DNA of 63,634 nucleotides, filler included, from Octopus bimaculoides (Eukaryota), in NCBI RefSeq assembly GCF_001194135.2. It is 4 parts of 3 records of this genome, joined end to end, with 100 filler letters (N's around TTAATTAATTAA, not from the genome) between each part and the next. Parts side by side here need not be neighbours in the genome. Positions count along the whole stretch, not along the records: positions 5,737 to 22,754 come from NC_069007.1; 3 more parts are not named here. One strand, 5' to 3'. The stretch's first letter is position 1. Each line of letters begins with the position of its first letter. The position numbers and the translations under genes were made by a program. The notes below the pieces were generated by a model. That model ran no database searches and was not told the origin of the DNA. It worked only from the letters and a program-made list of their open reading frames with translations. Below, in pieces: positions 13,011-51,039 of the stretch.

Positions 13011-14599
13011 ACGATGGCTTCAGACCCGTGTTCGAGTATTGCTGTCGCCTGATCGAAAGTCCCACACATGCCAAGGCTACGACCAGCCATTTTTTGTGAT
13101 ATGTCTTACTTTTTTCAATGATGCCTATGCATGATGATATTTTCACTAATCTAAAACTAATCTAAAACTAATCTCTGAACCTGAACAACATAAACTCGAA
13201 AAGAAGAACTAATCTACGTCATCGAATATTGTTGGTGTTGCAGGTTTTCTCTCAGAGTTTCCCTTTCCTAGAGAGATGTTGTGACAACAGCAAAGGGACC
13301 CCTCCACTCCCAGTGACTTTTACCTGAGAATGTACCTTAAGAAAGCAAAAATATAAAATAAAGAATTTGGATGAGTGAATAAAACAAAGCATTTGGATGA
13401 GTGAATAATAGTTTAGATAGGGTAACAATATCTCGTATGCTCTTTTTGTTTATAACAGTAAGGTGTAATTTGAGGTAGTTTTATTTGCTATTTCTAACAG
13501 GTCAGGAGACTTCTCTCTTTGGCACATAAATTCTTTTGTCTTTTATTTCTGTAGGTAACCAAAGCCCAACTGACAATCGTCAAAGATGCTTGCAAGGGTA
13601 CACTGAGAACAAACTGTAGTAAAGTCCAAACAGAGTTTAATGTTGCTGTATCGACTGTAACAATGTCCGACCTACAGAAACCCCTATATTCCGGATTGGT
13701 AATGAGCTTGTTTATCTTGAACTTACAAACGCCAATCCCAGTCAATAAACAACAGCAAGCAGTTTACTGGGTCCAACATATCAACTCANNNNNNNNNNNN
13801 NNNNNNNNNNNNNNNNNNNNNNNNNNNNNNNNNNNNNNNNNNNNNNNNNNNNNNNNNNNNNNNNNNNNNNNNNNNNNNNNNNNNNNNNNNNNNNNNNNNN
13901 NNNNNNNNNNNNNNNNNNNNNNNNNNNNNNNNNNNNNNNNNNNNNNNNNNNNNNNNNNNNNNNNNNNNNNNNNNNNNNNNNNNNNNNNNNNNNNNNNNNN
14001 NNNNNNNNNNNNNNNNNNNNNNNNNNNNNNNNNNNNNNNNNNNNNNNNNNNNNNNNNNNNNNNNNNNNNNNNNNNNNNNNNNNNNNNNNNNNNNNNNNNN
14101 NNNNNNNNNNNNNNNNNNNNNNNNNNNNNNNNNNNNNNNNNNNNNNNNNNNNNNNNNNNNNNNNNNNNNNNNNNNNNNNNNNNNNNNNNNNNNNNNNNNN
14201 NNNNNNNNNNNNNNNNNNNNNNNNNNNNNNNNNNNNNNNNNNNNNNNNNNNNNNNNNNNNNNNNNATATATATATATATCATGGCACTCCCACATTCTTC
14301 TTCTTCTTATTCCCTACCAAGAATTCACAACGATCTCGAACCCACGAGAGTAAACAAGAGAGACAGAGAAAGGCAGAAGCAAGGAAAATGTCCCCTTGTA
14401 TTTGAATACTATGCAAGTATTCTTTTAAAAAAAACTTTTCTTTTAATTTTTCCAAAATTCAATTGTTCTCCATACTTACAGTTGAAAAAGTCTCAATGAC
14501 TGAAACCGGTACTGAAATGGTTTTTATAAAATTATTTTAGCATTTTTTACCTTGACTTTTTCTTCCATATATATACATATATATATATATATATATCCA

Positions 14600-15190
14600 A
14601 ACACATCATATGTCCAAACCAACACAGTCCCCTATTTTCCACAATTCATGTCTCTTCTCCTTCCACGTGTTCCATCCATTTTAAGCGACAGGCACTTCTT
14701 TATGCAACTGTCTTCGTCCAAGCACATCACATGTCCAAACCAACACAGTCCCCTCTTTTCCACACTTCTTTTTATATCTAATTTTTTCTCAATACACAAG
14801 TACTTTATCATACATGCACTCTGATGTGTTCCATCCATTTTAAGCGACAGGCACTTCTTTATGCAACTGTCTTCCTCTATACACATCGCATGTCCAAACC
14901 AACACAGTCCCCTCTTTTCCACACTTCTTCTTATGTCTAATTTTTTCTCAGTACACAAGTACTTTATCATCCATGCACACTGATGTTGAACATCCAACAG
15001 AGCACACTAACCCTAACCCTAACTTCATTCCTCTCTAGTCTTCGGATGTCCTTTTCATTCATGGCCCATTTTTCACTACCATGTAGCATCGCTGTTCATA
15101 CATAATAATCTTACAGTCTGCATTTTTTTTGCAGAGAGATCTTTTGTTGCCAGAAAGTGTAATGGCTCTCTGAACTTTCTCCATCCTATT
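14600..15190 (-). mobile_element. RTE-clade LINE 3' fragment with an internal 159-bp tandem duplication
   Basis: RGLCWFGHVM...KKCLSL..DGTRGR present twice; an upstream TAMLHGSE.WA-like motif. Units start at 14667 and 14826. Confidence 0.75.
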
Positions 15191-15295
15191 TTTATTCTAG
15201 CAGTTATACTTCAATGACAATCAAATACTTAAATTTAACAAGAATTTAATATTTACAGATTCATAAACATAAGTTTGTTTTAAATATTTTTCCAG

Positions 15296-15853
15296 ATTGC
15301 GCCAGTGCCCAAATCGACCTTGTTTTCGTTATTGATTCATCCGGAAGTGTTAAAAAACCTAACTTCGAGAAAACAAAAACTTTCTTGCAAAATATTGTAA
15401 CTAATCTAGACATTGGTCCAGATACGACACGTGTTTCTGTTATTAGATTCTCAGATGAACCCGATATACCATTTGGGTTAGGAACCTACAACACGAAAAC
15501 TGCAATAATGAAAGCTATTAGCGATATAGAGTACATTGATGGGAACACTTTCACACACTTGGCGCTTGATAAAGCACGTAACAACGTTTTTACGAGTACA
15601 AGAAAATCTGTTGCTTCCAAAGTTTTAGTGTTGGTAACTGACGGAAAGTCAGAGAGTGAAAATAAAACAGTAGCGGCAGCTGAAGAACTGAAAGATAATG
15701 GCGTCACTATATTTACAATTGGAGTTGTCAATCCACTTGTATCTGAGTTAATTGCATCAGCAAGTGAACCCAGTTGTACACATTTCATCAACTTGAAAGA
15801 TTATAATGAAATTAGTTTTATTGTGAAGGAAATTCAATCTGATTCCTGTAAAG
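15296..15853 (+). CDS. Internal coding exon: complete von Willebrand factor A (VWA) domain, phase 1-1
   Basis: Acceptor ttttccAG (15294-95), donor GTAAGT (15854). The 558 nt read (D)CASAQIDLVFVIDSSGSVKK...RVSVIRFS...GNTFTHLAL...KVLVLVTDGKS...GVTIFTIGV...SEPSCTHF...DSCK. MIDAS DSSGS is at 15334-15348, with conserved T and TDG. Matrilin/collagen-type VWA. Confidence 0.95.
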
Positions 15854-16061
15854 GTAAGTCTGATATCAAATAACTTTCATTATCAGTGGTGGTGGGGTGG
15901 TGGTATCCCTGTCCTTTGTCATTTCCTCTGTGAGGTACGTATATCATATTACATTACATTATATTATATTATATTATAGTTTCGTATATTTATATTATAT
16001 TATATTTTGTTTTATTTGATTGCTATGCTGTGCCTTCCTAAACGTCACCTTCTATTTCCAG

Positions 16062-16186
16062 CTCCGACCGTTGTTCAAAAAGAAACTCCGTTACTTAATA
16101 TTACCATTCCAAAAACTAACGAGACAAAACAACAAGTCCTGCAGGTCACCAACACGACTAAGTCCACCTTGGGTACAACAGTTCTG
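16062..16186 (+). CDS. Exon A1 of repeat module 1 (phase 1-0)
   Basis: tctatttccAG acceptor, GTAAGA donor. Reads APTVVQKETPLLNITIPKTNETKQQVLQVTNTTKSTLGTTVL. In frame with flanking exons and paralogous to exon 18854-18975. Confidence 0.88.
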
Positions 16187-16445
16187 GTAAGACGAATATT
16201 CTAAGAATAATATATACTGAATTGTGTTTTACTGTTTTTATGGATGATTGACAAAGAAGGGAGAGTGCCCATAAACCTCTCGGTCCTTCCAGGCCTAGAT
16301 GGTCACATTCTTATTAGTGACGTTTTATTGGGACATTTATGGTTGCAAGATAAATGTGGACAAAGGAGGGAATGAGTTCACATTGGGTGATTGAAGAAAG
16401 GATTCGGCATACTGGTTAGTACAGGAAAAATAGGGTCTAGTCATG

Positions 16446-16622
16446 GATTGTGCAATGAGGTGGATAGAGGTGTGTGTGTGTGGCATTTACTTTGGAGGGG
16501 ATGATATGCAAATGGCTAGTTCCGAAAAGACGATGTTGTGGTTGTGGTAATGGTAGAAGAGGCAATAGGAGGAGAAAGTGGGTTTATGGGACAAAGTTTG
16601 GAATCCTTTTCTAAATAAAACA
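16446..16622 (-). repeat. Left arm of intronic inverted repeat
   Basis: Reverse complement matches 19915-20089 with 7 substitutions and one 2-nt indel (manual alignment). Confidence 0.92.
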
Positions 16623-16735
16623 GCCAAATGAAGTCAGGGGTACCGTATATGTCGTGCCCATTTTGTTTTCCACTGAGTGTCTGTCCAGTTTCGTATGGTC
16701 ATTGTGTATGTTATATCTGCTGTTGTTTTCTGCAG

Positions 16736-16970
16736 GCGAGTGTCCAGTGTGGTGTGGTCAATGTATATGCTTCATTTAGCAGCAATTATCCTAATGAAGC
16801 CGACTACGACTACAAGACTTTGGCAACTGATGATCAGCCAGGGAAATTATTTCTTGTACAAAAATCAGAACTTGAGAAGCTTGCACTTAATGTCCTTTCC
16901 CAAAAACGATTCGATCTCAATTCCTCAGCCTGTGACAATCCTTCCTACAACATCAGCATCAACCCAACAG
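16736..16970 (+). CDS. Exon B1 of repeat module 1 (phase 0-1)
   Basis: ttttctgcAG acceptor, GTAAGC donor. Reads ASVQCGVVNVYASFSSNYPNEADYDYKT...SACDNPSYNISINPT. 37/79 aa identical to exon B2. Confidence 0.92.
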
Positions 16971-17057
16971 GTAAGCTACTTTATTTTCTTTTAAACATTG
17001 TTCCATAATCTTTATATCTTTCACGTAAGGACAGTAAATTACGGAATAATCAGTGGA

Positions 17058-17265
17058 CCCTTTAGCATTTAAACTGGCCATATCCGGCCAAAATATTCTA
17101 CCTGTTTATGTTCAAACTTTCAAGTTGTGGCCACTTACTCCTACCCTACAATGTCATTCTAAAAATATACAATTACATCATCGAAATTTCAAAGCTATGA
17201 GATATTACAGGATTAATTTGAAGCAATATGAATAAATAAATGTTAAATTCAAGAGGATAATCTGT
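17058..17265. mobile_element. Degenerate piggyBac-like MITE in intron
   Basis: Begins CCCTTTAGCATT, a piggyBac-type terminus. The right end is eroded and no intact TTAA TSD was seen. Confidence 0.45.
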
Positions 17266-17816
17266 AAGTTCATCTAGAAAATAAAATGAATCAGGCCTAC
17301 AAGAACAGACCACTAAGTAAATTCTAATCTGCTACAGTGCAACTGCATTGGTGACCAGGTCACCCTTGGACAACAGATATATTAACATCTCCAAAAATTA
17401 ATGGAAATTGAAATAAACTATTTTGTAACTATTTTAAATTACTAAAATATTTCGCGATGGTGTAATTATTGTTGTTACATCTAGTGGAGCCCTTCCCTCT
17501 GGATTTATTCACCAATCTAATTTTCAAGGTTTGGTTGGGAAGTTCACCAACCAAAGCCAACACTATTCTAAACTACAACCTCAACACCACTCCCCCAACA
17601 CTAGTAAGTACTACTACCGCCACCAACACTCACATCACCACGACTAACACCAACACTACTAACATACCACAACGGCAAACACTACTACTACCGCTACCAC
17701 TCAACAGAACACACACACACATAATATATATCTAACTATAACTATGTTTAGATGTGCTCACTACCAATGGAAGCTCTGTCTATTCCTGCTCTAACATTTG
17801 TCTTTCTCTATCACAG

Positions 17817-17900
17817 CACCCAGAATTGAAGCGGCTTGCATCGTAAAACATGTCAATAGCTCATGTACTGCAAAGCAACTCGACTCTGCATGTTACAACA
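17817..17900 (+). CDS. Exon C1 of repeat module 1 (84 nt, phase 1-1, three Cys)
   Basis: tttctctatcacAG acceptor, GTAAGT donor. Reads APRIEAACIVKHVNSSCTAKQLDSACYN. Same length and Cys spacing as exon 21139-21222. Confidence 0.85.
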
Positions 17901-18340
17901 GTAAGTACTTACATGTTTTTAGCCCCTAAACATTACCTTCTCCTTCGGTATTATTACGGGTACACATAATCCAGAGGCTTACAAGTTCACAATCTATGTC
18001 TACAGACCTTTAGCCGTGCATTGAGGGCAGGGCCTCAGGCTAAGATCAAACTTTGTTGAAGAGACCATGGAAGAATTCATTTAAATAATAAGGGGTTCTT
18101 GGTTGTAAAGTAGTTATGAGGAACCGACATAATGCTTCAATGTTAGACCTCTTCAAATGCACAGTTTAAATCCCCACACCCTTGACCCCTGGGTACCATT
18201 AATGTAGACGCTAAGCATTTCTTTTGTCTGAGACCAACACCATATATTGATATGGTTTTCCTTCCTATAGCACCTTCCATTTCGTAATTGCACTGCTTGC
18301 TGGTAGGTGTGTTGTACAAGGGAACCACATAAACTGAACG

Positions 18341-18376
<36 letters not shown>

Positions 18377-18744
18377 NNNNNNNNNNNNNNNNNNNNNNNN
18401 NNNNNNNNNNNNNNNNNNNNNNNNNNNNNNNNNNNNNNNNNNNNNNNNNNNNNNNNNNNNNNNNNNNNNNNNNNNNNNNNNNNNNNNNNNNNNNNNNNNN
18501 NNNNNNNNNNNNNNNNNNNNNNNNNNNNNNNNNNNNNNNNNNNNNNNNNNNNNNNNNNNNNNNNNNNNNNNNNNNNNNNNNNNNNNNNNNNNNNNNNNNN
18601 NNNNNNNNNNNNNNNNNNNNNNNNNNNNNNNNNNNNNNNNNNNNNNNNNNNNNNNNNNNNNNNNNNNNNNNNNNNNNNNNNNNNNNNNNNNNNNNNNNNN
18701 NNNNNNNNNNNNNNNNNNNNNNNNNNNNNNNNNNNNNNNNNNNN

Positions 18745-18793
<49 letters not shown>

Positions 18794-18853
18794 TATGTAT
18801 GTATGTTTATGTCATTTTGCGTCTTTTTTGTAAATGACGTATTCTGTTTGCAG

Positions 18854-18975
18854 CGACACCTGTTGTTGGTGAAGTCAGTCAATTGTATAATAACAGTATT
18901 CTCAAGAATGGCCAAATACAAGAACAAGTTTTGGAAATCAGCAACAGTACAGATTCTTCAGGAAGTACGATTCTG
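18854..18975 (+). CDS. Exon A2 of repeat module 2 (phase 1-0)
   Basis: ttctgtttgcAG acceptor, GTAAGA donor. Reads TTPVVGEVSQLYNNSILKNGQIQEQVLEISNSTDSSGSTIL. Shares QVL...T.L and the CTG/GTAAGACGA junction with A1. Confidence 0.88.
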
Positions 18976-19667
18976 GTAAGACGATCTTTCTTCAAAATAC
19001 CGCTACGTTTCTCTTTTTATTTTATGGTCATGTAATTAGTCACATGTACTGGTAGGGGTGGGGTCAACTCCCACAAACCTCGTTGCCCCACCGAAATCTG
19101 TCAGATTCATCTGAATGATTTTCTGTTTGTGCCTGTTTTAGATAAAGGGTTCGAGTGTAAGACTTAATAGGGGAAACGTAAGGGTGAGATCCAGAAGGGG
19201 TGATGAGAAGGGGAGTGATTGGTGGGACTGTAAACTTCTGAGGAGACTAGATACAGGTGGGCCTTATTATGCAAGTCATATTGGTGATCCTTGAAGAGGG
19301 AGAAGGATTTAAGATGCTAGGAGAAGATGAATTGTTAATGATTGTCTCCACATCACGTCTGAATTGTTGGAATTGTAGGAAATAGGTCCTTAATTGGTGG
19401 GGCTAAAGAAATGGTATTCCCAGAAATGGAGAAGGATTTCTTTTGAATTGGAAAGTTCAGTAAAGTGACTGGGTGGCACAGGGGTATAAAGTTTGAGGGT
19501 AATGGAAGGGATATTGACAGGGCGAGACAGTATATTGGTAGGAAGATATCTTTGACCAGTGTCCGAAGTTCATCATGTATGTTATATCTTTGCTGTTCTG
19601 ACCAGGTGAGTACCCAGTGTGCCGNNNNNNNNNNTCATGTATGTTATATCTTTGCTGTTCTGACCAG

Positions 19668-19905
19668 GTGAGTACCCAGTGTGCCGAAGTCACTGTGTAT
19701 GGTGCCTTTAACAACAGTTATCCCATTGAAGCTGACCACGACTACAAAACGTCTGCAACGGATAAGAATCCTGGTAAAGTAATAATTGATGCGAGAGAAT
19801 CACAAACTGATAATTTTACACTGACTGTCTTCTCTAAGAGACAATATGGCCCGAACTCTCCAGCTTGTGACCATCCCTCCTATGCAGTCAGCATCAAACC
19901 AAACG
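19668..19905 (+). CDS. Exon B2 of repeat module 2 (phase 0-1)
   Basis: ctgttctgaccAG acceptor, GTAAGA donor. Reads VSTQCAEVTVYGAFNNSYPIEADHDYKT...SPACDHPSYAVSIKPN. Confidence 0.92.
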
Positions 19906-19914
19906 GTAAGAAAA

Positions 19915-20089
19915 TGTTTTATTTAGAAAAGGATTCCAAACTTTGTCCCATAAACCCACTTTCTCATCCTATTGCCTCTTCTACTATTACCACAACCACA
20001 ACATCGTCTTTTCGGAATTAGCTATTTGCATATCATCCCTTCCAAAGTAAATGCGACACATACACCTCTATCCACCTCATTGCACAATC
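19915..20089 (+). repeat. Right arm of intronic inverted repeat, starting 10 nt into the intron after exon B2
   Basis: tgttttatttagaaaaggattcc...tgcacaatc is the reverse complement of 16446-16622. Confidence 0.92.
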
Positions 20090-20380
20090 TTATTCTACGT
20101 TCTGTATGCTTAGAGGAGTGTATACATACATACATGTGTATATAGAATCTATATACACATATAGACAACAGCAACAACAGCTGTGGCGGCAATTACACCT
20201 GCAGCGACTCAAACGGCGGCAATAGAAATACCAATAGCTACAGTATCATCAGCAATGCATCGGGCAGGGGCAGCAACAGGGGCCTTGTTGACGGGCACTG
20301 TGACAGGAGCAACAGCATTCCCAGGAACGGGTTTAGCAGTGACAACAGCATCAGCAGAGAAAGCGACAGTTACAACAGCA

Positions 20381-20485
20381 GCTGTAACACCACCAGCTGT
20401 AACACCACCAGCTGTAACACCACCAGCTGTAACACCACCAGCTGTAACACCACCAGCTGTAACACCACCAGCTGTAACACCACCA
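20381..20485 (+). repeat. Perfect minisatellite, 7 x 15 bp (gctgtaacaccacca)
   Basis: Direct reading; encodes AVTPP x7 or SCNTT x7 depending on frame. Confidence 0.95.
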
Positions 20486-20487
20486 GT

Positions 20488-20830
20488 ATAAGCACACAGG
20501 CACGGAAATATAGCAGTTCTACAGGCGGCTCTTCAAACATCCTCTTACCAACAAAGGTCCTCTTTTGGGATATCATAGAGCTGCAACATCAGAGAGATCC
20601 CAGTAACGTATGACATTTAAATGAAGACGTTACGCTATACATACTTAAATGGAGGGTCCTAGAACAACCGGGTCTATGCCTCGACGGGAGCATACGATGT
20701 AAGCTTTGCTTTGTCCGAAGGACTAAGAATCCTGAAAAACTCTCATGACTCGGAGACCGTTTTAAACTCTAAAACAGAAATATTTACTCAGTACTCTCAT
20801 CAGAGGAAATTAGTGTTGGAAACTCCGAAT
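20488..20830 (+). mobile_element. Penelope-like GIY-YIG endonuclease remnant
   Basis: Broken frames give LKWRVLE...RCKLC..E.LRIL...VLNSKTEIF....H.RK.VL, matching the W.IL...C.LCL.EK..IL...LLN.R.E....C.H pattern. Confidence 0.55.
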
Positions 20831-21138
20831 TCCCTATTTCCTAACTATGGAAATGCTACCACCATCAGATGAATTCGACAGGGGTCATGAACGAATATAA
20901 CTGAATCCGAACTAAAAGGAATAACTCCGCTCTGCCCAATGTTTTGCCAGTTGAGTTTCTTCTTGAATGTTTTGTTCACAAAATTAACTGACCAATCAAG
21001 TTTATCTCCATCCAGTTGTTGAGAGGTTATGTGCCTCCGGCTATTTGAGTCTTACAAGTCTAACGTTTTAGAATGTGTCACTTTTCACACTTATGAACTA
21101 CTGACCAATATCTATCTATCTATCTATCTTTTGTACAG

Positions 21139-21222
21139 ATCCCACACTTGAAGTAGTTTGCCATCGAAAACAAGATGAAAGACATTGTACTCCTGTAGAA
21201 TCTGAGTCTAAATGTTCTAAAT
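21139..21222 (+). CDS. Exon C2 of repeat module 2 (84 nt, phase 1-1)
   Basis: cttttgtacAG acceptor, GTAAGT donor. Reads DPTLEVVCHRKQDERHCTPVESESKCSK, with three Cys aligned to C1. Confidence 0.85.
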
Positions 21223-21687
21223 GTAAGTAATACAAACTTTTAATCTCCAAATTTCACCTCTTTTTTGATTGCTTCCTCTTTGTTTGTTTGCCTATTTTTT
21301 GTGTGTGTTCTTGCTACACACAATGCATCAATGTTAGAACTCTTCAATTGCCCACATTAAACCCCACTACCTGGCTCTTGTGCGTTTTTACTGGAATCCT
21401 TTCTGTTTGTAACATTTAGTTGATGTCTCCAGTCTGCTAAATAACTTGATGTCTCCATACATTAATTCCTGTTGATTCTTCCATTGCATAGTTCCAGTGT
21501 TTATACAATGGTGCCAGAGACAGAAGTGGGTCGTTAGTGAAGACTCGCCTAACACTAGAATAAAAAATAAAAAATAGATCAACAAAATTTTCTTTTTAAT
21601 AAAACCATTTTTTTACTCTGTGACTAATTTCTTAGAGAAAATTACTTACATGCTGACATAACATAGAAATCTTTGTAATTCTTATAG

Positions 21688-21779
21688 ATGTTTACGGATT
21701 CTTTGCCATCAAATTTGATTGCAAAGATTTCAAATTTGGTGGCAAAGAATCCGAACTAGATCGAAAACATTTATATTAG
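21688..21779 (+). CDS. Candidate alternative terminal exon T1 (30 aa, hydrophilic)
   Basis: ttcttatAG acceptor. In phase with C2 it reads YVYGFFAIKFDCKDFKFGGKESELDRKHLY*. AATAAA at 21803-21808. Confidence 0.55.
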
Positions 21780-21802
21780 CAAATGAAACATGAGTGACGG
21801 AG

Positions 21803-21808
21803 AATAAA
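21803..21808 (+). promoter_or_regulatory. Candidate polyadenylation signal for T1
   Basis: AATAAA 24 nt downstream of the T1 stop. AT-rich context lowers specificity. Confidence 0.4.
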
Positions 21809-21983
21809 TGTAAACCCAAAATTTCCACTTTCCTGTTTTATATACACATACATATATACATACATACAAATTCGTAGGAGAGGTCCTCTCAAGGTGAATA
21901 CTGGCATATTCAGTATTCTAACTTAAAAATCCACATTGAGTTGGATATACCAATACTGCTTCTGTCACTTATATAATTTTATT

Positions 21984-22075
<92 letters not shown>

Positions 22076-22147
22076 TACACCCATCCATATGCATACACAC
22101 ATTCATACATATATAATAAATGTATTTATATCTTTTATATTTTTCAG

Positions 22148-22338
22148 TGACCACAATGCATACAATAACAGCAATTGATGTTGCAGTCACAGCGAAAGAT
22201 GTTGCAGTCAAAGCAACTGATGTTGCAGTCACACCGACTGGTGTTGCAGTCACACCGACTGGTGTTGCAGTTACTAAACAACTTTCCATAAATGCATGGA
22301 TTTATGCTGGACTCTTACTTGTTTGGCAAATGGCTTGA
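22148..22338 (+). CDS. Terminal exon T2: Thr/Val-rich repeat stalk plus hydrophobic GPI-signal-like C-terminus
   Basis: Strong acceptor cttttatatttttcAG. In phase with C2 it reads [17 protein letters not shown]...[25 protein letters not shown]. Confidence 0.75.
22177..22281 (+). repeat. Coding minisatellite, 5 x 21 bp ([D/G]VAVTxx)
   Basis: Unit gatgttgcagtcacaccgact and variants; the period of 21 preserves frame. Confidence 0.9.
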
Positions 22339-22854
22339 TCAGAAGCAACGACCAGCTATAACTGCTACCAATACCAATGAACTGTTATAGACTCATACAA
22401 ACACATCTATACATACATATATGTATATATATGCACAGATATACAGTCCACTTCCTCCCTTCACCATCCTCTCTGCTCTCGTGTGACCTGTGGTCAACTT
22501 TCTTTTCACTCCAGCCGCTGTGAAGGCAAGACGAACTACTAGCGTTCTACCTCAGATTTGCGTTTGGCCGTACGGCTTTTGAATGTTGTTTTCACTGTCC
22601 AATTTTTCCTGTCTTGGTTTGTGTTTGCCACCTTGGAAACCTCTGTGTAGTGGGTTGATCCATTACTCAGGAAGAGACTATTCTAGAGTACGTTCTGTCT
22701 TATCTTCGAAACGTCTAGATAGAATAGAGACAGCTGATGAAGGGATATTCCAAGNNNNNNNNNNNNNNNNNNNNNNNNNNNNNNNNNNNNNNNNNNNNTT
22801 AATTAATTAANNNNNNNNNNNNNNNNNNNNNNNNNNNNNNNNNNNNNNNNNNNN

Positions 22855-48625: not shown

Positions 48626-50531
48626 TGAATAGGTTTTTATAAATAAATATATTTTCTAAAGAAATAAATAGAATTTAGAGATAGATAAAATTTATAATCA
48701 TCTTTTACTTGTTTCGGTAACTGGAGTGCCGAGCAGTGGAACTGAGCAAGAAACCAACTCCTACGCCCGCTTGTCTATGCAGTTTATGAATAAATAAGAG
48801 TGAGTGTTTATAATTATAGAAGAGGCAATTTTTGAATAAAAAATAAGTTTGTAGGAATAAGAAGAATGTAGAAATAGAATGTGTGTGTGTGTCTGAACAG
48901 AATGCATGAATATGTTGAAATAAATTTAGAAATAAGTATAATGTGGTAAGAAAATTTATAAGTAAATAGAAAGTAGAAATAATTTAAAAAAATTTTTTTT
49001 TTTTTTTTTAAAGTTTCAGCTTAGAGCTGCGGCCATGCTGATGCACCACCGTGTTGCTACACTGTAATTACAGGGAGCCTCTTACAATATGTGGCACTTG
49101 GTGAAGAATGGAGTTTGATTTAGCAACCCTTATGGAAATTAAAAATGAATATAATGTTGAAATAAATACATTTGCGGATGAATATATTTTTCAAATAAAT
49201 GATATGTAGAAAAGAATAAAACGTAGAAGGAAATTATGCAATAAATTACATCGTAGAAATAAATGAAATGCATAAAGATATATAATGTAAAATTTAAATA
49301 CAATTTAACTCATTTTAGAAAGTAGAAATATGTAGAACGAAATATAATTTCGAAATTAATATTTGTACATAAATAGAGATGTAAGTTCAACATACATCTA
49401 GAGATGGGTACATCATCAGTGTAGTGTCCTTGAGTCACTGGCTGTTTCGGCTCTTACAACAGACACCTTCATACAGGTGACCAGACCTAGGTTAATCAAA
49501 CCTTGGCTCAGATCCAAGCGATATTCGACTGCGCTACCCGATCACCACTTTTCAATCAGAGTCATCTAGATACTTTCTCGGCAAACCTTAAGTTGTTCTT
49601 TGATCGCTCTTCTTCTGAAAGTTCCTGAAGAAATAGAATATACAAGTATAGAATGTGTCAAATATTGTAGAAAATATAAAATACGTTATAGAAATATAAG
49701 GCATTAGCTTAAAAGCTGCACTCGGTGCGGACTTTCAAGCTAGCTCCTGCGGAGAGCTAATTGGGCCTGCGGCCCAAAATTGGAGAGAGCTAAATAGCAT
49801 GGCTCTAATACGTCTATAATGACTATGTGTCTTGGTGATGTTTGACCAGAGGTTAAGGATGGATGAGAATTAATTCTCTAATGCAACCATTCTATTGTTC
49901 CAGTCCCATGTTGAATTCCAACTGTTGGCCAATTTGTCTCAAAGTTCTTATCTCGGTGTAAAATTAACGAAGCGAATGTGATTTATCTCCTCCTTGATCG
50001 CTGATGTCATCTGAGAAACGCCAACTAAGATGGCGTGAATCAGCCAAGCTTTACCTGCTAGAAATAACAACCCGAATGCTTGCAAATCAGATCCTAATAC
50101 TGGATCAAGAACCAAATGAAGAGCAGGTTTTCAATCCTGGGATCATCCTGATTCCAGAACGGTATAGTACGTCTATGTAGAGTAAATGTAGACTGAGATA
50201 CAGGGGTCCCAGGCAGACACAATTTGCTTTTATTATAATAGATGTAGAAAAAATGGAATACAACAATAAAACATATGTAGAAGTATACTGGGTGTACAAA
50301 TATTTAGAATTTAGAGATATATAATATTAATGCGAAGATAGAATATGTATATTGAATGTAGAAAAACAGGAAAGAAAAACTGAAATTATCATAAAATAAT
50401 TGAGAGCACAAAATCTTAGACTGAGACGGACATGATTCACAATTAACCAAACTCTATTCAGAGAATGGCACTGTTTGGCACAGACTCTTTCTACAGACCA
50501 ACCCATAAAGCCCAAAGTATGGAAAAATATA

Positions 50532-50834
50532 CAGGGTGTTCAAAACATCTCTCCGCAGTGAATTTTTTTCATCCTGTCTCTCCAAGAGTCAATCTCTCCA
50601 AGAGTCAAACTCTCCAAGAGTCAAACTCTCCAAGAGTCAAACTCTCCAAGATGTATTTCAAAACATGTGTAGAAGAGTCAACTTGTGTATTGAAAATGAA
50701 GGACGACACTTTCAACACCACTTATAAGGTTTTTTAAAGTCTTGTAAAGTCTAATATATTCTTTTGTAGTCTTATACCATCTTATTTATTTTGCAATAAA
50801 ATACTTACTGCGGAGAGACTTTTTGAACATCCTG
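50532..50834. mobile_element. Tc1/mariner-type MITE (303 bp, ~29-bp TIRs, TA TSD)
   Basis: Left TIR CAGGGTGTTCAAAACATCTCTCCGCAGTG; right TIR reverse complement CAGGATGTTCAAAAAGTCTCTCCGCAGTA. TA on both flanks. Confidence 0.9.
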
Positions 50835-51039
50835 TAATTGTACGTTGTTGTTGTTGCCAACCGTGTCGTTAGGTTTGTCTTGCTGTTTACTAATTTAGGA
50901 TGGAGATAGAAAAAACCTGCGTATTTCTGTTTCCATGACAGAATTAAGGGACAGGACTGGATGCTTTTTCTGTTTATCTTTTAGTCAGGAGCCAAGACAG
51001 TGCCCTCTGACTTTCTACAAGACCTGTTAGATTAGTGAA

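What the first reader, a model, noticed from the sequence alone, without database searches (positions are those of the whole stretch)
16446..20089. Intronic inverted repeat brackets four coding exons: candidate RNA duplex for circRNA, exon skipping or ADAR editing
Seen: 16446-16622 and 19915-20089 are reverse complements with 7 substitutions and one 2-nt indel (~95%), much better preserved than the surrounding decayed repeats. The right arm starts 10 nt into the intron after the exon B2 donor, and the left arm ends 113 nt before the exon B1 acceptor. Five of the 7 substitutions would be G-U wobbles in the sense pre-mRNA. Known: flanking complementary intronic sequences promote back-splicing, and coleoid cephalopods edit dsRNA heavily by ADAR. 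Inference: pairing loops out B1-C1-A2-B2. That predicts a 679-nt circRNA, or an A1-to-C2 skip that is out of frame (IPHLK*) and gives a VWA-only or NMD product.
Basis: partly seen in the sequence, partly recalled or inferred. Interest (0 to 1): 0.75.

Follow-up and report, generated by a model that had tools for sequence, protein, structure and literature searches.

The report
Young inverted intron copy bracketing four exons
An octopus gene carries a recent, reversed 175-base copy of one of its own introns 3.3 kb downstream, so its pre-mRNA could fold into a long double strand around four exons, but nothing shows that this ordinary kind of repeat is used or selected.

Summary
16446-16622 and 19915-20089 are reverse complements with 7 substitutions and one 2-nt indel (self-BLAST E 1.5e-60).

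The repeat is not two transposon insertions and it is not conserved. The left arm is ordinary ancestral intron. Homology to O. vulgaris and O. sinensis relatives runs straight through both of its borders. The right arm is a clean, lineage-specific inverted insertion at +10 of the B2-C2 intron. It has no target-site duplication and is absent from the O. sinensis orthologue. The 95% identity therefore reflects youth, not preservation.

Folded together, the arms give 173 base pairs (-313 kcal/mol). The prerequisites for ADAR editing, back-splicing or exon skipping are met, but no RNA data could be examined.

RefSeq isoforms X1 and X2, the two built on this locus, contain all four bracketed exons. 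Inverted-repeat pairs are abundant in neighbouring octopus loci. Published work on octopus reports low circRNA levels.

Verdict: a real feature of a known kind and probably neutral, most plausibly an ADAR substrate.

The parts
16446..16622 (+). Left arm: ancestral, in-place segment of the A1-B1 intron, the source-type sequence of the repeat
   Evidence: Alignment to the right arm. The whole intron stretch 16187-16639 aligns at about 78% to A-B introns of O. vulgaris, and its flanks align to the outgroups. The same segment is found in sense orientation in the A-B intron of every paralogue examined.
19915..20089 (-). Right arm: 175-nt inverted copy inserted at +10 of the B2-C2 intron, specific to the O. 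bimaculoides lineage
   Evidence: 95% identical to the left arm. Its flanks do not align to outgroup A-B introns. When it is removed, 'ggtaag..aaaa|ttattctac' aligns to the conserved start of all B-C introns. There is no equivalent in the O. sinensis B2-C2 intron.
15296..15853 (+). VWA-domain exon upstream of the repeat modules
16062..16186 (+). Exon A1, upstream of the left arm; its donor would be used in the predicted skip
   Evidence: residues match RefSeq XP_052833180
16736..16970 (+). Exon B1, the first bracketed exon; its acceptor would be used in a back-splice
17817..17900 (+). Exon C1, bracketed
18377..18744 (.). Assembly gap inside a (TG)n run in the C1-A2 intron; true length unknown
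   Evidence: Exon order across the gap is supported by the O. sinensis gene.
18854..18975 (+). Exon A2, bracketed
19573..19686 (.). 10-N gap (19625-19634) flanked by an exact 52-nt duplicate; probably an unmerged contig overlap at the B2 acceptor
   Evidence: D13. The collapsed form is collinear with O. sinensis L001 25640-25720.
19668..19905 (+). Exon B2, the last bracketed exon; its donor would be used in a back-splice
21139..21222 (+). Exon C2, downstream of the right arm; its acceptor would be used in the predicted skip

Best explanation
Shown: what it is. The repeat is a young inverted duplication specific to the O. bimaculoides lineage. It is neither a conserved element nor a pair of transposon insertions. 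About 175 nt of the intron between exons A and B was copied in reverse orientation into the intron after exon B2, 9 nt past the donor site. The source was this gene's own A1-B1 intron or that of a very close paralogue.

Inferred: how it arose. The insertion is clean, has no target-site duplication, shares 2-4 nt of possible microhomology at one junction, and has a small deletion beside it. This points to a replication template switch or templated break repair. The two copies have since diverged by about 4%, with changes on both arms.

Inferred: what it does. The pre-mRNA now carries two complementary segments about 3.3 kb apart that can form a 173-bp, nearly perfect duplex around exons B1-C1-A2-B2. 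When the gene is transcribed, the duplex most likely forms in some molecules and is hyper-edited by ADAR within the arms. It may yield small amounts of a 679-nt circular RNA or of an out-of-frame A1-C2 skip that would be degraded by NMD. I judge it a neutral by-product, not a selected regulator.
For: The repeat is real: E 1.5e-60, 7 substitutions plus one indel.

The left arm is ancestral:
- 16187-16639 aligns continuously at about 78% to the A-B introns of three O. vulgaris gene copies.
- Its flanks align to the outgroups, while the right arm's flanks do not.
- In 303 kb from six octopus loci the segment occurs only in sense orientation in A-B introns. The one antisense copy is the right arm.

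The right arm is a clean insertion:
- With it removed, the intron start aligns to the conserved B-C intron start of all relatives. There is no target-site duplication, TG/TGTT is shared at the 5' junction, and 14-18 nt are missing after 'gtaag'.
- It is absent from the O. sinensis orthologue.
- The sequence after it (20372-20503) is homologous, in the same orientation, to the B1-C1 intron, so only the arm was inserted.

Age: arm distance is 0.041, against 13-24% divergence of orthologous introns. Outgroups place about 4 changes on the right arm and 2-3 on the left.

Duplex: -313 kcal/mol, 173 pairs, weak self-structure of each arm.

No sign of selection:
- The arm region is less conserved than the adjacent intron.
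- Inverted pairs are common in these loci: 41 in 30 kb and 92 in 106 kb, including an unrelated 407-nt pair bracketing four exons in the O. sinensis orthologue.

Literature: octopus editing is concentrated in intron and 3'UTR hairpins, and circRNAs are low overall (PMC9699675).
Against: - No transcript data were available, so duplex formation, editing, back-splicing and skipping are all untested.
- Only one assembly of O. bimaculoides was accessible. The window is that same assembly with the same gaps. The right arm has no independent confirmation and the genome-wide copy number is unknown.
- All five transitions keep pairing as G-U in the sense RNA (p = 0.03). This could hint at selection for pairing.
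- The microhomology is short, and its assignment depends on the inferred ancestral sequence.
- The true donor of the copy could not be identified, because the paralogous O. bimaculoides loci could not be fetched.
Confidence: 0.75

Rival explanations
1. One reading: the repeat is a selected cis-regulator. Pairing of the arms loops out B1-C1-A2-B2 to make a 679-nt circRNA, or to switch the gene to an NMD or VWA-only product, and the pairing is maintained by selection.
For: The geometry and duplex energy are suitable. All 5 transitions are wobble-compatible in the sense strand. Reverse-complementary matches promote both back-splicing and exon skipping in other animals (PMC8330042, PMC4617980). 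The O. sinensis orthologue has annotated isoforms that skip A-B exon pairs.
Against: - The repeat is absent from the O. sinensis orthologue and from all paralogues sampled.
- It is young, and its arm region shows no elevated conservation.
- The skip is out of frame, and a reading across the back-splice stops after 14 codons.
- RefSeq isoforms X1 and X2 contain all four exons.
- circRNAs are low in octopus.
- The wobble bias is also what transcription-associated strand asymmetry would give (C-to-T and A-to-G excess on the sense strand). That point rests on my own knowledge and was not tested here.
Confidence: 0.1
2. The arms are two independent insertions of one mobile-element family (SINE or MITE) in opposite orientations.
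For: The arm length of about 175 nt is typical of SINEs or MITEs. Octopus introns are full of such elements; a tRNA-like SINE sits in the O. sinensis B2-C2 intron.
Against: - The left arm has no borders. Homology to orthologous and paralogous introns runs through both of its ends.
- There is no target-site duplication at either arm.
- No other copies occur in 303 kb of octopus DNA apart from the homologous intron position.
- The right arm resembles the left arm (95%) far more than any other copy (72-81%).
- There is no Rfam or tRNA-like signal in the arms.
Confidence: 0.03
3. The right arm is an assembly artefact, a chimeric contig in a gap-rich short-read assembly.
For: The locus has many gaps, and an unmerged 52-nt overlap lies 230 nt upstream of the right arm. 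The chromosome-level record carries the same contigs, so there is no independent support.
Against: - The right arm lies inside a gap-free contig, 19635-22754.
- It differs from the left arm at 7 sites plus an indel, with derived changes on both arms. A re-used sequence would not show this.
- Both of its borders fall at a single point of the ancestral intron.
Confidence: 0.07
4. A variant of the best explanation: the donor was not this gene's own left arm but the A-B intron of a close, possibly inverted, paralogue in the tandem cluster, copied by ectopic repair or gene conversion.
For: The family is tandemly arrayed, with one inverted member in O. vulgaris. The three O. vulgaris copies of the segment are nearly identical to each other. 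O. bimaculoides has paralogues nearby and 460 kb upstream.
Against: No O. bimaculoides paralogue sequence of this intron could be obtained. The left arm is the closest known match at 95%.
Confidence: 0.25

Closest known systems
Intronic reverse-complementary matches that flank circularised or skipped exons (IRAlu pairs in mammals, the laccase2 repeats in Drosophila, RCMs in C. elegans; PMC4617980, PMC8330042)
   Same: Two complementary segments in inverted orientation lie in the introns on either side of a block of internal exons with canonical splice sites. The duplex is far longer than the few tens of nucleotides reported to be sufficient (that figure is from my own knowledge).
   Different: No back-splice or skip junction has been observed here. 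The arms are not transposon copies. The right arm sits only 9 nt from the donor. The pair is absent from the sister species.
ADAR hyper-editing substrates formed by nearby inverted repeats in introns and UTRs (PMC9989829; PMC9699675 for octopus)
   Same: The repeat would give a long, near-perfect intramolecular dsRNA from evolutionarily young copies a few kb apart within one transcript. This is the substrate class said to carry most metazoan editing.
   Different: Editing was not measured here, and the arms are unique intron sequence, not an annotated repeat family.
Template-switch mutations and templated insertions that create reverse-complement copies of nearby sequence (PMC5453318, PMC7954356, PMC8794818)
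   Same: A one-step origin of a perfect inverted repeat from neighbouring sequence, with no target-site duplication, short junction homology and an accompanying small deletion.
   Different: The copy is 175 nt and about 3.3 kb from its source. This is longer and more distant than the short-range events those papers model. The mechanism is inferred from the junctions only.
Docking-site and selector-sequence RNA pairings that control choice among tandemly duplicated exons (Dscam1 type; from my own knowledge)
   Same: The repeat lies in a cluster of tandemly duplicated exon modules, and the orthologue has alternative module usage.
   Different: There is a single pair, not one docking site with many selectors. 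It is not conserved, and the looped-out block is out of frame.

Membership tests
circRNA-promoting flanking intronic complementary sequences | Reverse-complementary segments in the intron upstream of the first circularised exon and the intron downstream of the last | tested here: met
   The left arm is in the A1-B1 intron and the right arm in the B2-C2 intron, at 95% over 175-177 nt.
circRNA-promoting flanking intronic complementary sequences | An observed back-splice junction (B2 donor 19905 joined to B1 acceptor 16736), resistant to RNase R | not testable with these tools
   No RNA-seq access. No Logan-derived protein fragment of this gene turned up in the homology search.
circRNA-promoting flanking intronic complementary sequences | Pairing across the exons is not out-competed by pairing within one intron | tested here: met
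   No other non-low-complexity inverted match exists in the piece, and each arm has weak self-structure. Caveat: sequence hidden in the gaps is unknown.
ADAR hyper-editing substrate | Long, near-perfect intramolecular duplex within one transcript | tested here: met
   173 intermolecular pairs, -313 kcal/mol. Both arms lie within introns of the RefSeq model.
ADAR hyper-editing substrate | Clusters of A-to-G RNA-DNA differences in the arms | not testable with these tools
   No matched RNA and DNA reads were available.
Transposon-derived inverted repeat pair (SINE or MITE) | Both arms are bounded insertions of a dispersed multi-copy family with target-site duplications | tested here: not met
   Homology to relatives runs through both borders of the left arm. 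There is no target-site duplication. In 303 kb the segment occurs only at the homologous intron position. The whole genome was not searchable.
Template-switch or templated-insertion product | An inverted copy of nearby sequence inserted at a single point, absent from the sister lineage | tested here: met
Template-switch or templated-insertion product | Microhomology at the switch points | tested here: inconclusive
   TG or TGTT is shared at the 5' junction if the ancestral site was 'aaaTGTTATTC', as in O. sinensis. Nothing clear is shared at the 3' junction.
Conserved regulatory RNA pairing for exon choice (docking/selector type) | Both pairing partners conserved across species or paralogues | tested here: not met
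   The antisense partner is found only in O. bimaculoides. The arm region is no better conserved than its surroundings.

The most novel reading that the evidence does not exclude
The inverted copy is a recently fixed, selected cis-element. A non-transposon template switch would have created, in one step, a duplex that makes a lineage-specific circRNA or an unproductive-splicing switch in a fast-evolving, tandemly duplicated VWA gene. On this reading, the wobble-only pattern of later transitions reflects selection to keep the arms paired in an ADAR-rich coleoid.
Probability: 0.07. Interest if true: 0.5.

Novelty: new member of a known kind. Interest (0 to 1): 0.2.

Why it matters
As it stands, this is one more intronic inverted repeat in a repeat-rich genome. 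Its value is as a clean, datable example. Both the source and the copy are visible, the insertion point is resolved to the base, and a sister species lacks it. That makes it a convenient natural test of how quickly a newly born 175-bp intronic duplex acquires ADAR editing, back-splicing or exon skipping in a coleoid, should anyone examine RNA from this gene. It also shows that high identity between arms should not be read as conservation.

Tried and rejected
- Look-ups that failed. P0001 and P0015 returned no record. The range of isoform X3 is 490 kb, too long to fetch, so the upstream O. bimaculoides paralogue could not be read.
- The chromosome-level record turned out to be the same assembly with identical gaps, so it gives no independent check.
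- A metagenome scan with a 25-mer from the arm found nothing.
- An Rfam scan found nothing in the arms, only sub-threshold miRNA-like hits at AT-rich palindromes elsewhere.
- Idea rejected: the left arm is a specially conserved intronic element. The whole A-B intron aligns to distant paralogues at similar identity, and the arm is slightly less conserved than the stretch before it.
- Idea rejected: the sequence after the right arm (20100-20520) is a further inverted fragment, for example of the last exon. It is instead homologous, in the same orientation, to the B1-C1 intron and to arrays in O. vulgaris.
- Idea not supported: one-sided hypermutation of one arm, by editing or deamination. Derived changes are split between the arms.
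- Unexplained: I could not account for the single L/Q difference between RefSeq isoforms X1 and X2 at the A2/B2 junction.
Full report
**Observation**

A local alignment pairs 16446-16622 (177 nt) with the reverse complement of 19915-20089 (175 nt). There are 7 substitutions and one 2-nt indel in a GT run. The ungapped core is 151 nt at 95%. A sensitive self-BLAST gives E 1.5e-60, and this is the only long inverted match in the piece that is not simple sequence. All seven differences have G on the left arm. Five are G/A, so they would be G-U pairs in the sense transcript.

**Gene model**

I located the splice sites by motif:

| Exon | Coordinates |
|---|---|
| VWA | 15296-15853 |
| A1 | 16062-16186 |
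| B1 | 16736-16970 |
| C1 | 17817-17900 |
| A2 | 18854-18975 |
| B2 | 19668-19905 |
| C2 | 21139-21222 |
| last | 22148-22338 |

- Joined together, these exons read without a stop. The translation is identical to residues 248-791 of RefSeq XP_052833180, 'collagen alpha-1(XII) chain isoform X2' of Octopus bimaculoides.
- Only the VWA domains match Pfam. The A-B-C modules match nothing.
The four bracketed exons total 679 nt, and an A1-C2 join reads IPHLK*.
- A reading across a B2-B1 back-splice stops after 14 codons.

**Gaps**

- The 10-N gap at 19625-19634 is flanked by an exact 52-nt duplicate. Collapsing the duplicate gives a sequence collinear with the O. sinensis orthologue up to and into exon B2. 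This is most likely an unmerged contig overlap. Exon B2 is entire and in frame to its right.
- O. vulgaris paralogues carry large 59-nt arrays at the equivalent position upstream of exon B. An extra repeat unit at this gap therefore cannot be excluded.
- The 368-N gap lies in a (TG)n run in the C1-A2 intron. C1 and A2 are consecutive in the RefSeq protein and in O. sinensis. The arm spacing of 3,292 nt is therefore only approximate.

**What the arms are**

I fetched six related loci, 303 kb in all:

| Locus | Content |
|---|---|
| L001 | O. sinensis orthologue |
| L002 | O. vulgaris, 106 kb, three gene copies |
| L003 | the O. bimaculoides chromosome record |
| L004, L005, L006 | three further paralogue loci |

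- L003 proved to be the same assembly as the window, with window coordinate + 17680 = L003 coordinate.
- The left arm is ordinary ancestral intron. The stretch 16187-16639 aligns continuously at about 78% with the A-B introns of the O. vulgaris copies. In a multiple alignment the left arm's flanks align to the outgroups, while the right arm's flanks do not.
- In every paralogue the segment lies in sense orientation between exons A and B. No relative has an antisense copy, and there is no third copy in the 50-kb O. bimaculoides locus.
- Across species the arm region is less conserved (78-80%) than the intron before it (84-86%). In distant paralogues the whole intron aligns about as well as the arm does.

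**Origin of the right arm**

- With 19915-20089 removed, the B2-C2 intron starts 'ggtaag..aaaa|ttattctac'. This aligns with the conserved start of B-C introns in all relatives; the O. sinensis B2 intron reads 'ggtaagcagtttcccttccaaatgttattccat'.
- The arm is therefore a clean insertion at one point. It has no target-site duplication, possibly shares TG or TGTT at the 5' junction, and has 14-18 nt missing beside it.
- The O. sinensis B2-C2 intron lacks it.
- The sequence downstream of the arm is ancestral. It is homologous, in the same orientation, to the B1-C1 intron.
- The arms differ by a distance of 0.041. Orthologous introns differ by 13-24%. Outgroups place about four changes on the right arm and two or three on the left.
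- Together this indicates a real inverted copy made after the split from O. sinensis, and not by transposition. A replication template switch or templated break repair is the inferred mechanism (compare PMC5453318, PMC7954356, PMC8794818). The donor may have been a close paralogue's intron rather than this gene's own, which I could not test.

**Likely consequence**

- Cofolding the arms as sense RNA gives -313 kcal/mol with 173 intermolecular pairs. The antisense value is -292, and shuffled controls give -85 +/- 6. Each arm alone folds weakly. The structural prerequisites for a long pre-mRNA duplex are met.
- Flanking complementary sequences are known to promote both back-splicing and exon skipping (PMC8330042, PMC4617980). 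Nearby inverted repeats are the main ADAR substrates in animals (PMC9989829).
- In octopus, editing is concentrated in intron and 3'UTR hairpins and circRNAs are low overall. The authors relate this to ADAR repressing circRNA formation (PMC9699675).
- I therefore rank ADAR hyper-editing of the arms as the most likely molecular outcome. A minor 679-nt circle or an NMD-targeted skip is possible. None of this could be tested here.

**Is it selected?**

The evidence points against selection:

- The pair is young and lineage-specific.
- The looped-out block is out of frame.
- RefSeq isoforms X1 and X2, the two built on this locus, contain all four exons.
- Inverted pairs are commonplace in these loci: 41 hits in 30 kb of O. 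sinensis and 92 in 106 kb of O. vulgaris. They include an unrelated 407-nt, 87% pair that also brackets four exons in the orthologue.

The only hint in favour is that all five transitions keep G-U pairing (p = 0.03). That is a small, post-hoc sample. A sense-strand excess of C-to-T and A-to-G changes in transcribed DNA could also produce it; that alternative rests on my own knowledge and was not tested.

**Verdict**

This is a new instance of a well-known kind of feature and is probably neutral. Its main merit is that its origin can be reconstructed to the base.

Noticed in passing
L002 27839-30898 (also about 84680-93447, and 49640-53600 on the minus strand); window 16682-16718 / 16741-16777 and 19553-19589: O. 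vulgaris paralogues carry a 59-nt minisatellite just upstream of exon B, with 52 copies in one gene and about 150 in another. Each unit holds a polypyrimidine tract, a CAG acceptor and the first ~27 nt of exon B, so the array is tens of tandem pseudo-acceptors. The window has only 2-3 decayed units at both B exons.
   Followed up: partly
window 19573-19686: The 10-N gap is flanked by an exact 52-nt duplicate that includes the B2 acceptor and the first 19 nt of exon B2. It is probably an unmerged overlap. Given the 59-nt arrays in relatives, it could instead hide extra repeat units.
   Followed up: partly
RefSeq proteins P0001 and P0023, residue 621 (window about 18973-18975 / 19668): Isoforms X1 and X2 differ only by Q versus L at the A2/B2 junction. 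The window encodes L (CTG). I could not derive Q from any canonical splice choice.
   Followed up: partly
L003 9899-11639 versus window 13561-15890: The RefSeq 791-aa model fuses the N-terminal and VWA exons of a partial upstream copy to this gene. Those exons lie about 21 kb upstream, and the N exon is 99.6% identical. Isoform X3 joins a paralogue about 460 kb upstream to exon A2. The models in this gap-rich tandem cluster look chimeric.
   Followed up: partly
P0009 (older O. bimaculoides model of the upstream paralogue): The model joins an A2-type exon directly to a C2-type exon out of frame ('STIR TPHVKWFAIESKMK...'). It may reflect a B exon lost in an assembly gap.
   Followed up: no
L001 (O. 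sinensis LOC115230178), exons at 15343-16551 and 19955-21001: The orthologue has an extra A-B exon pair. Annotated isoforms X2 and X3 each omit one of the two pairs in frame (120 aa), so module-level alternative splicing is annotated in this family.
   Followed up: partly
L001 15747-16147 and 23732-24134: An unrelated 407-nt inverted pair (87%) in the O. sinensis orthologue brackets exons B, A', B' and C1. Its left copy interrupts the sequence homologous to the left arm.
   Followed up: no
window 20379-20486 and 17610-17664: A perfect 15-nt tandem repeat (CAGCTGTAACACCAC, 7.2 copies) lies in the B2-C2 intron. A degenerate counterpart lies in the B1-C1 intron, and related arrays occur at L002 105241-105816.
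   Followed up: partly
window 16707-16970 versus L005 23723-23984: Between distant paralogues, exon B is less similar at the nucleotide level (65%) than the intron upstream of it (71-73%). This hints at fast or diversifying evolution of the B module, or at intron homogenisation.
   Followed up: no
window 21676-21773 and 21969-22116: AT-rich palindromes give sub-threshold hits to miRNA precursor models (best 39 bits against a gathering score of 90). These are probably chance matches.
   Followed up: no
window 9224-9556 (minus strand) and surroundings: Open reading frames that look, by eye, like fragments of a reverse transcriptase lie upstream of the gene. This suggests a decayed retroelement, but no domain search was run on them.
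   Followed up: no
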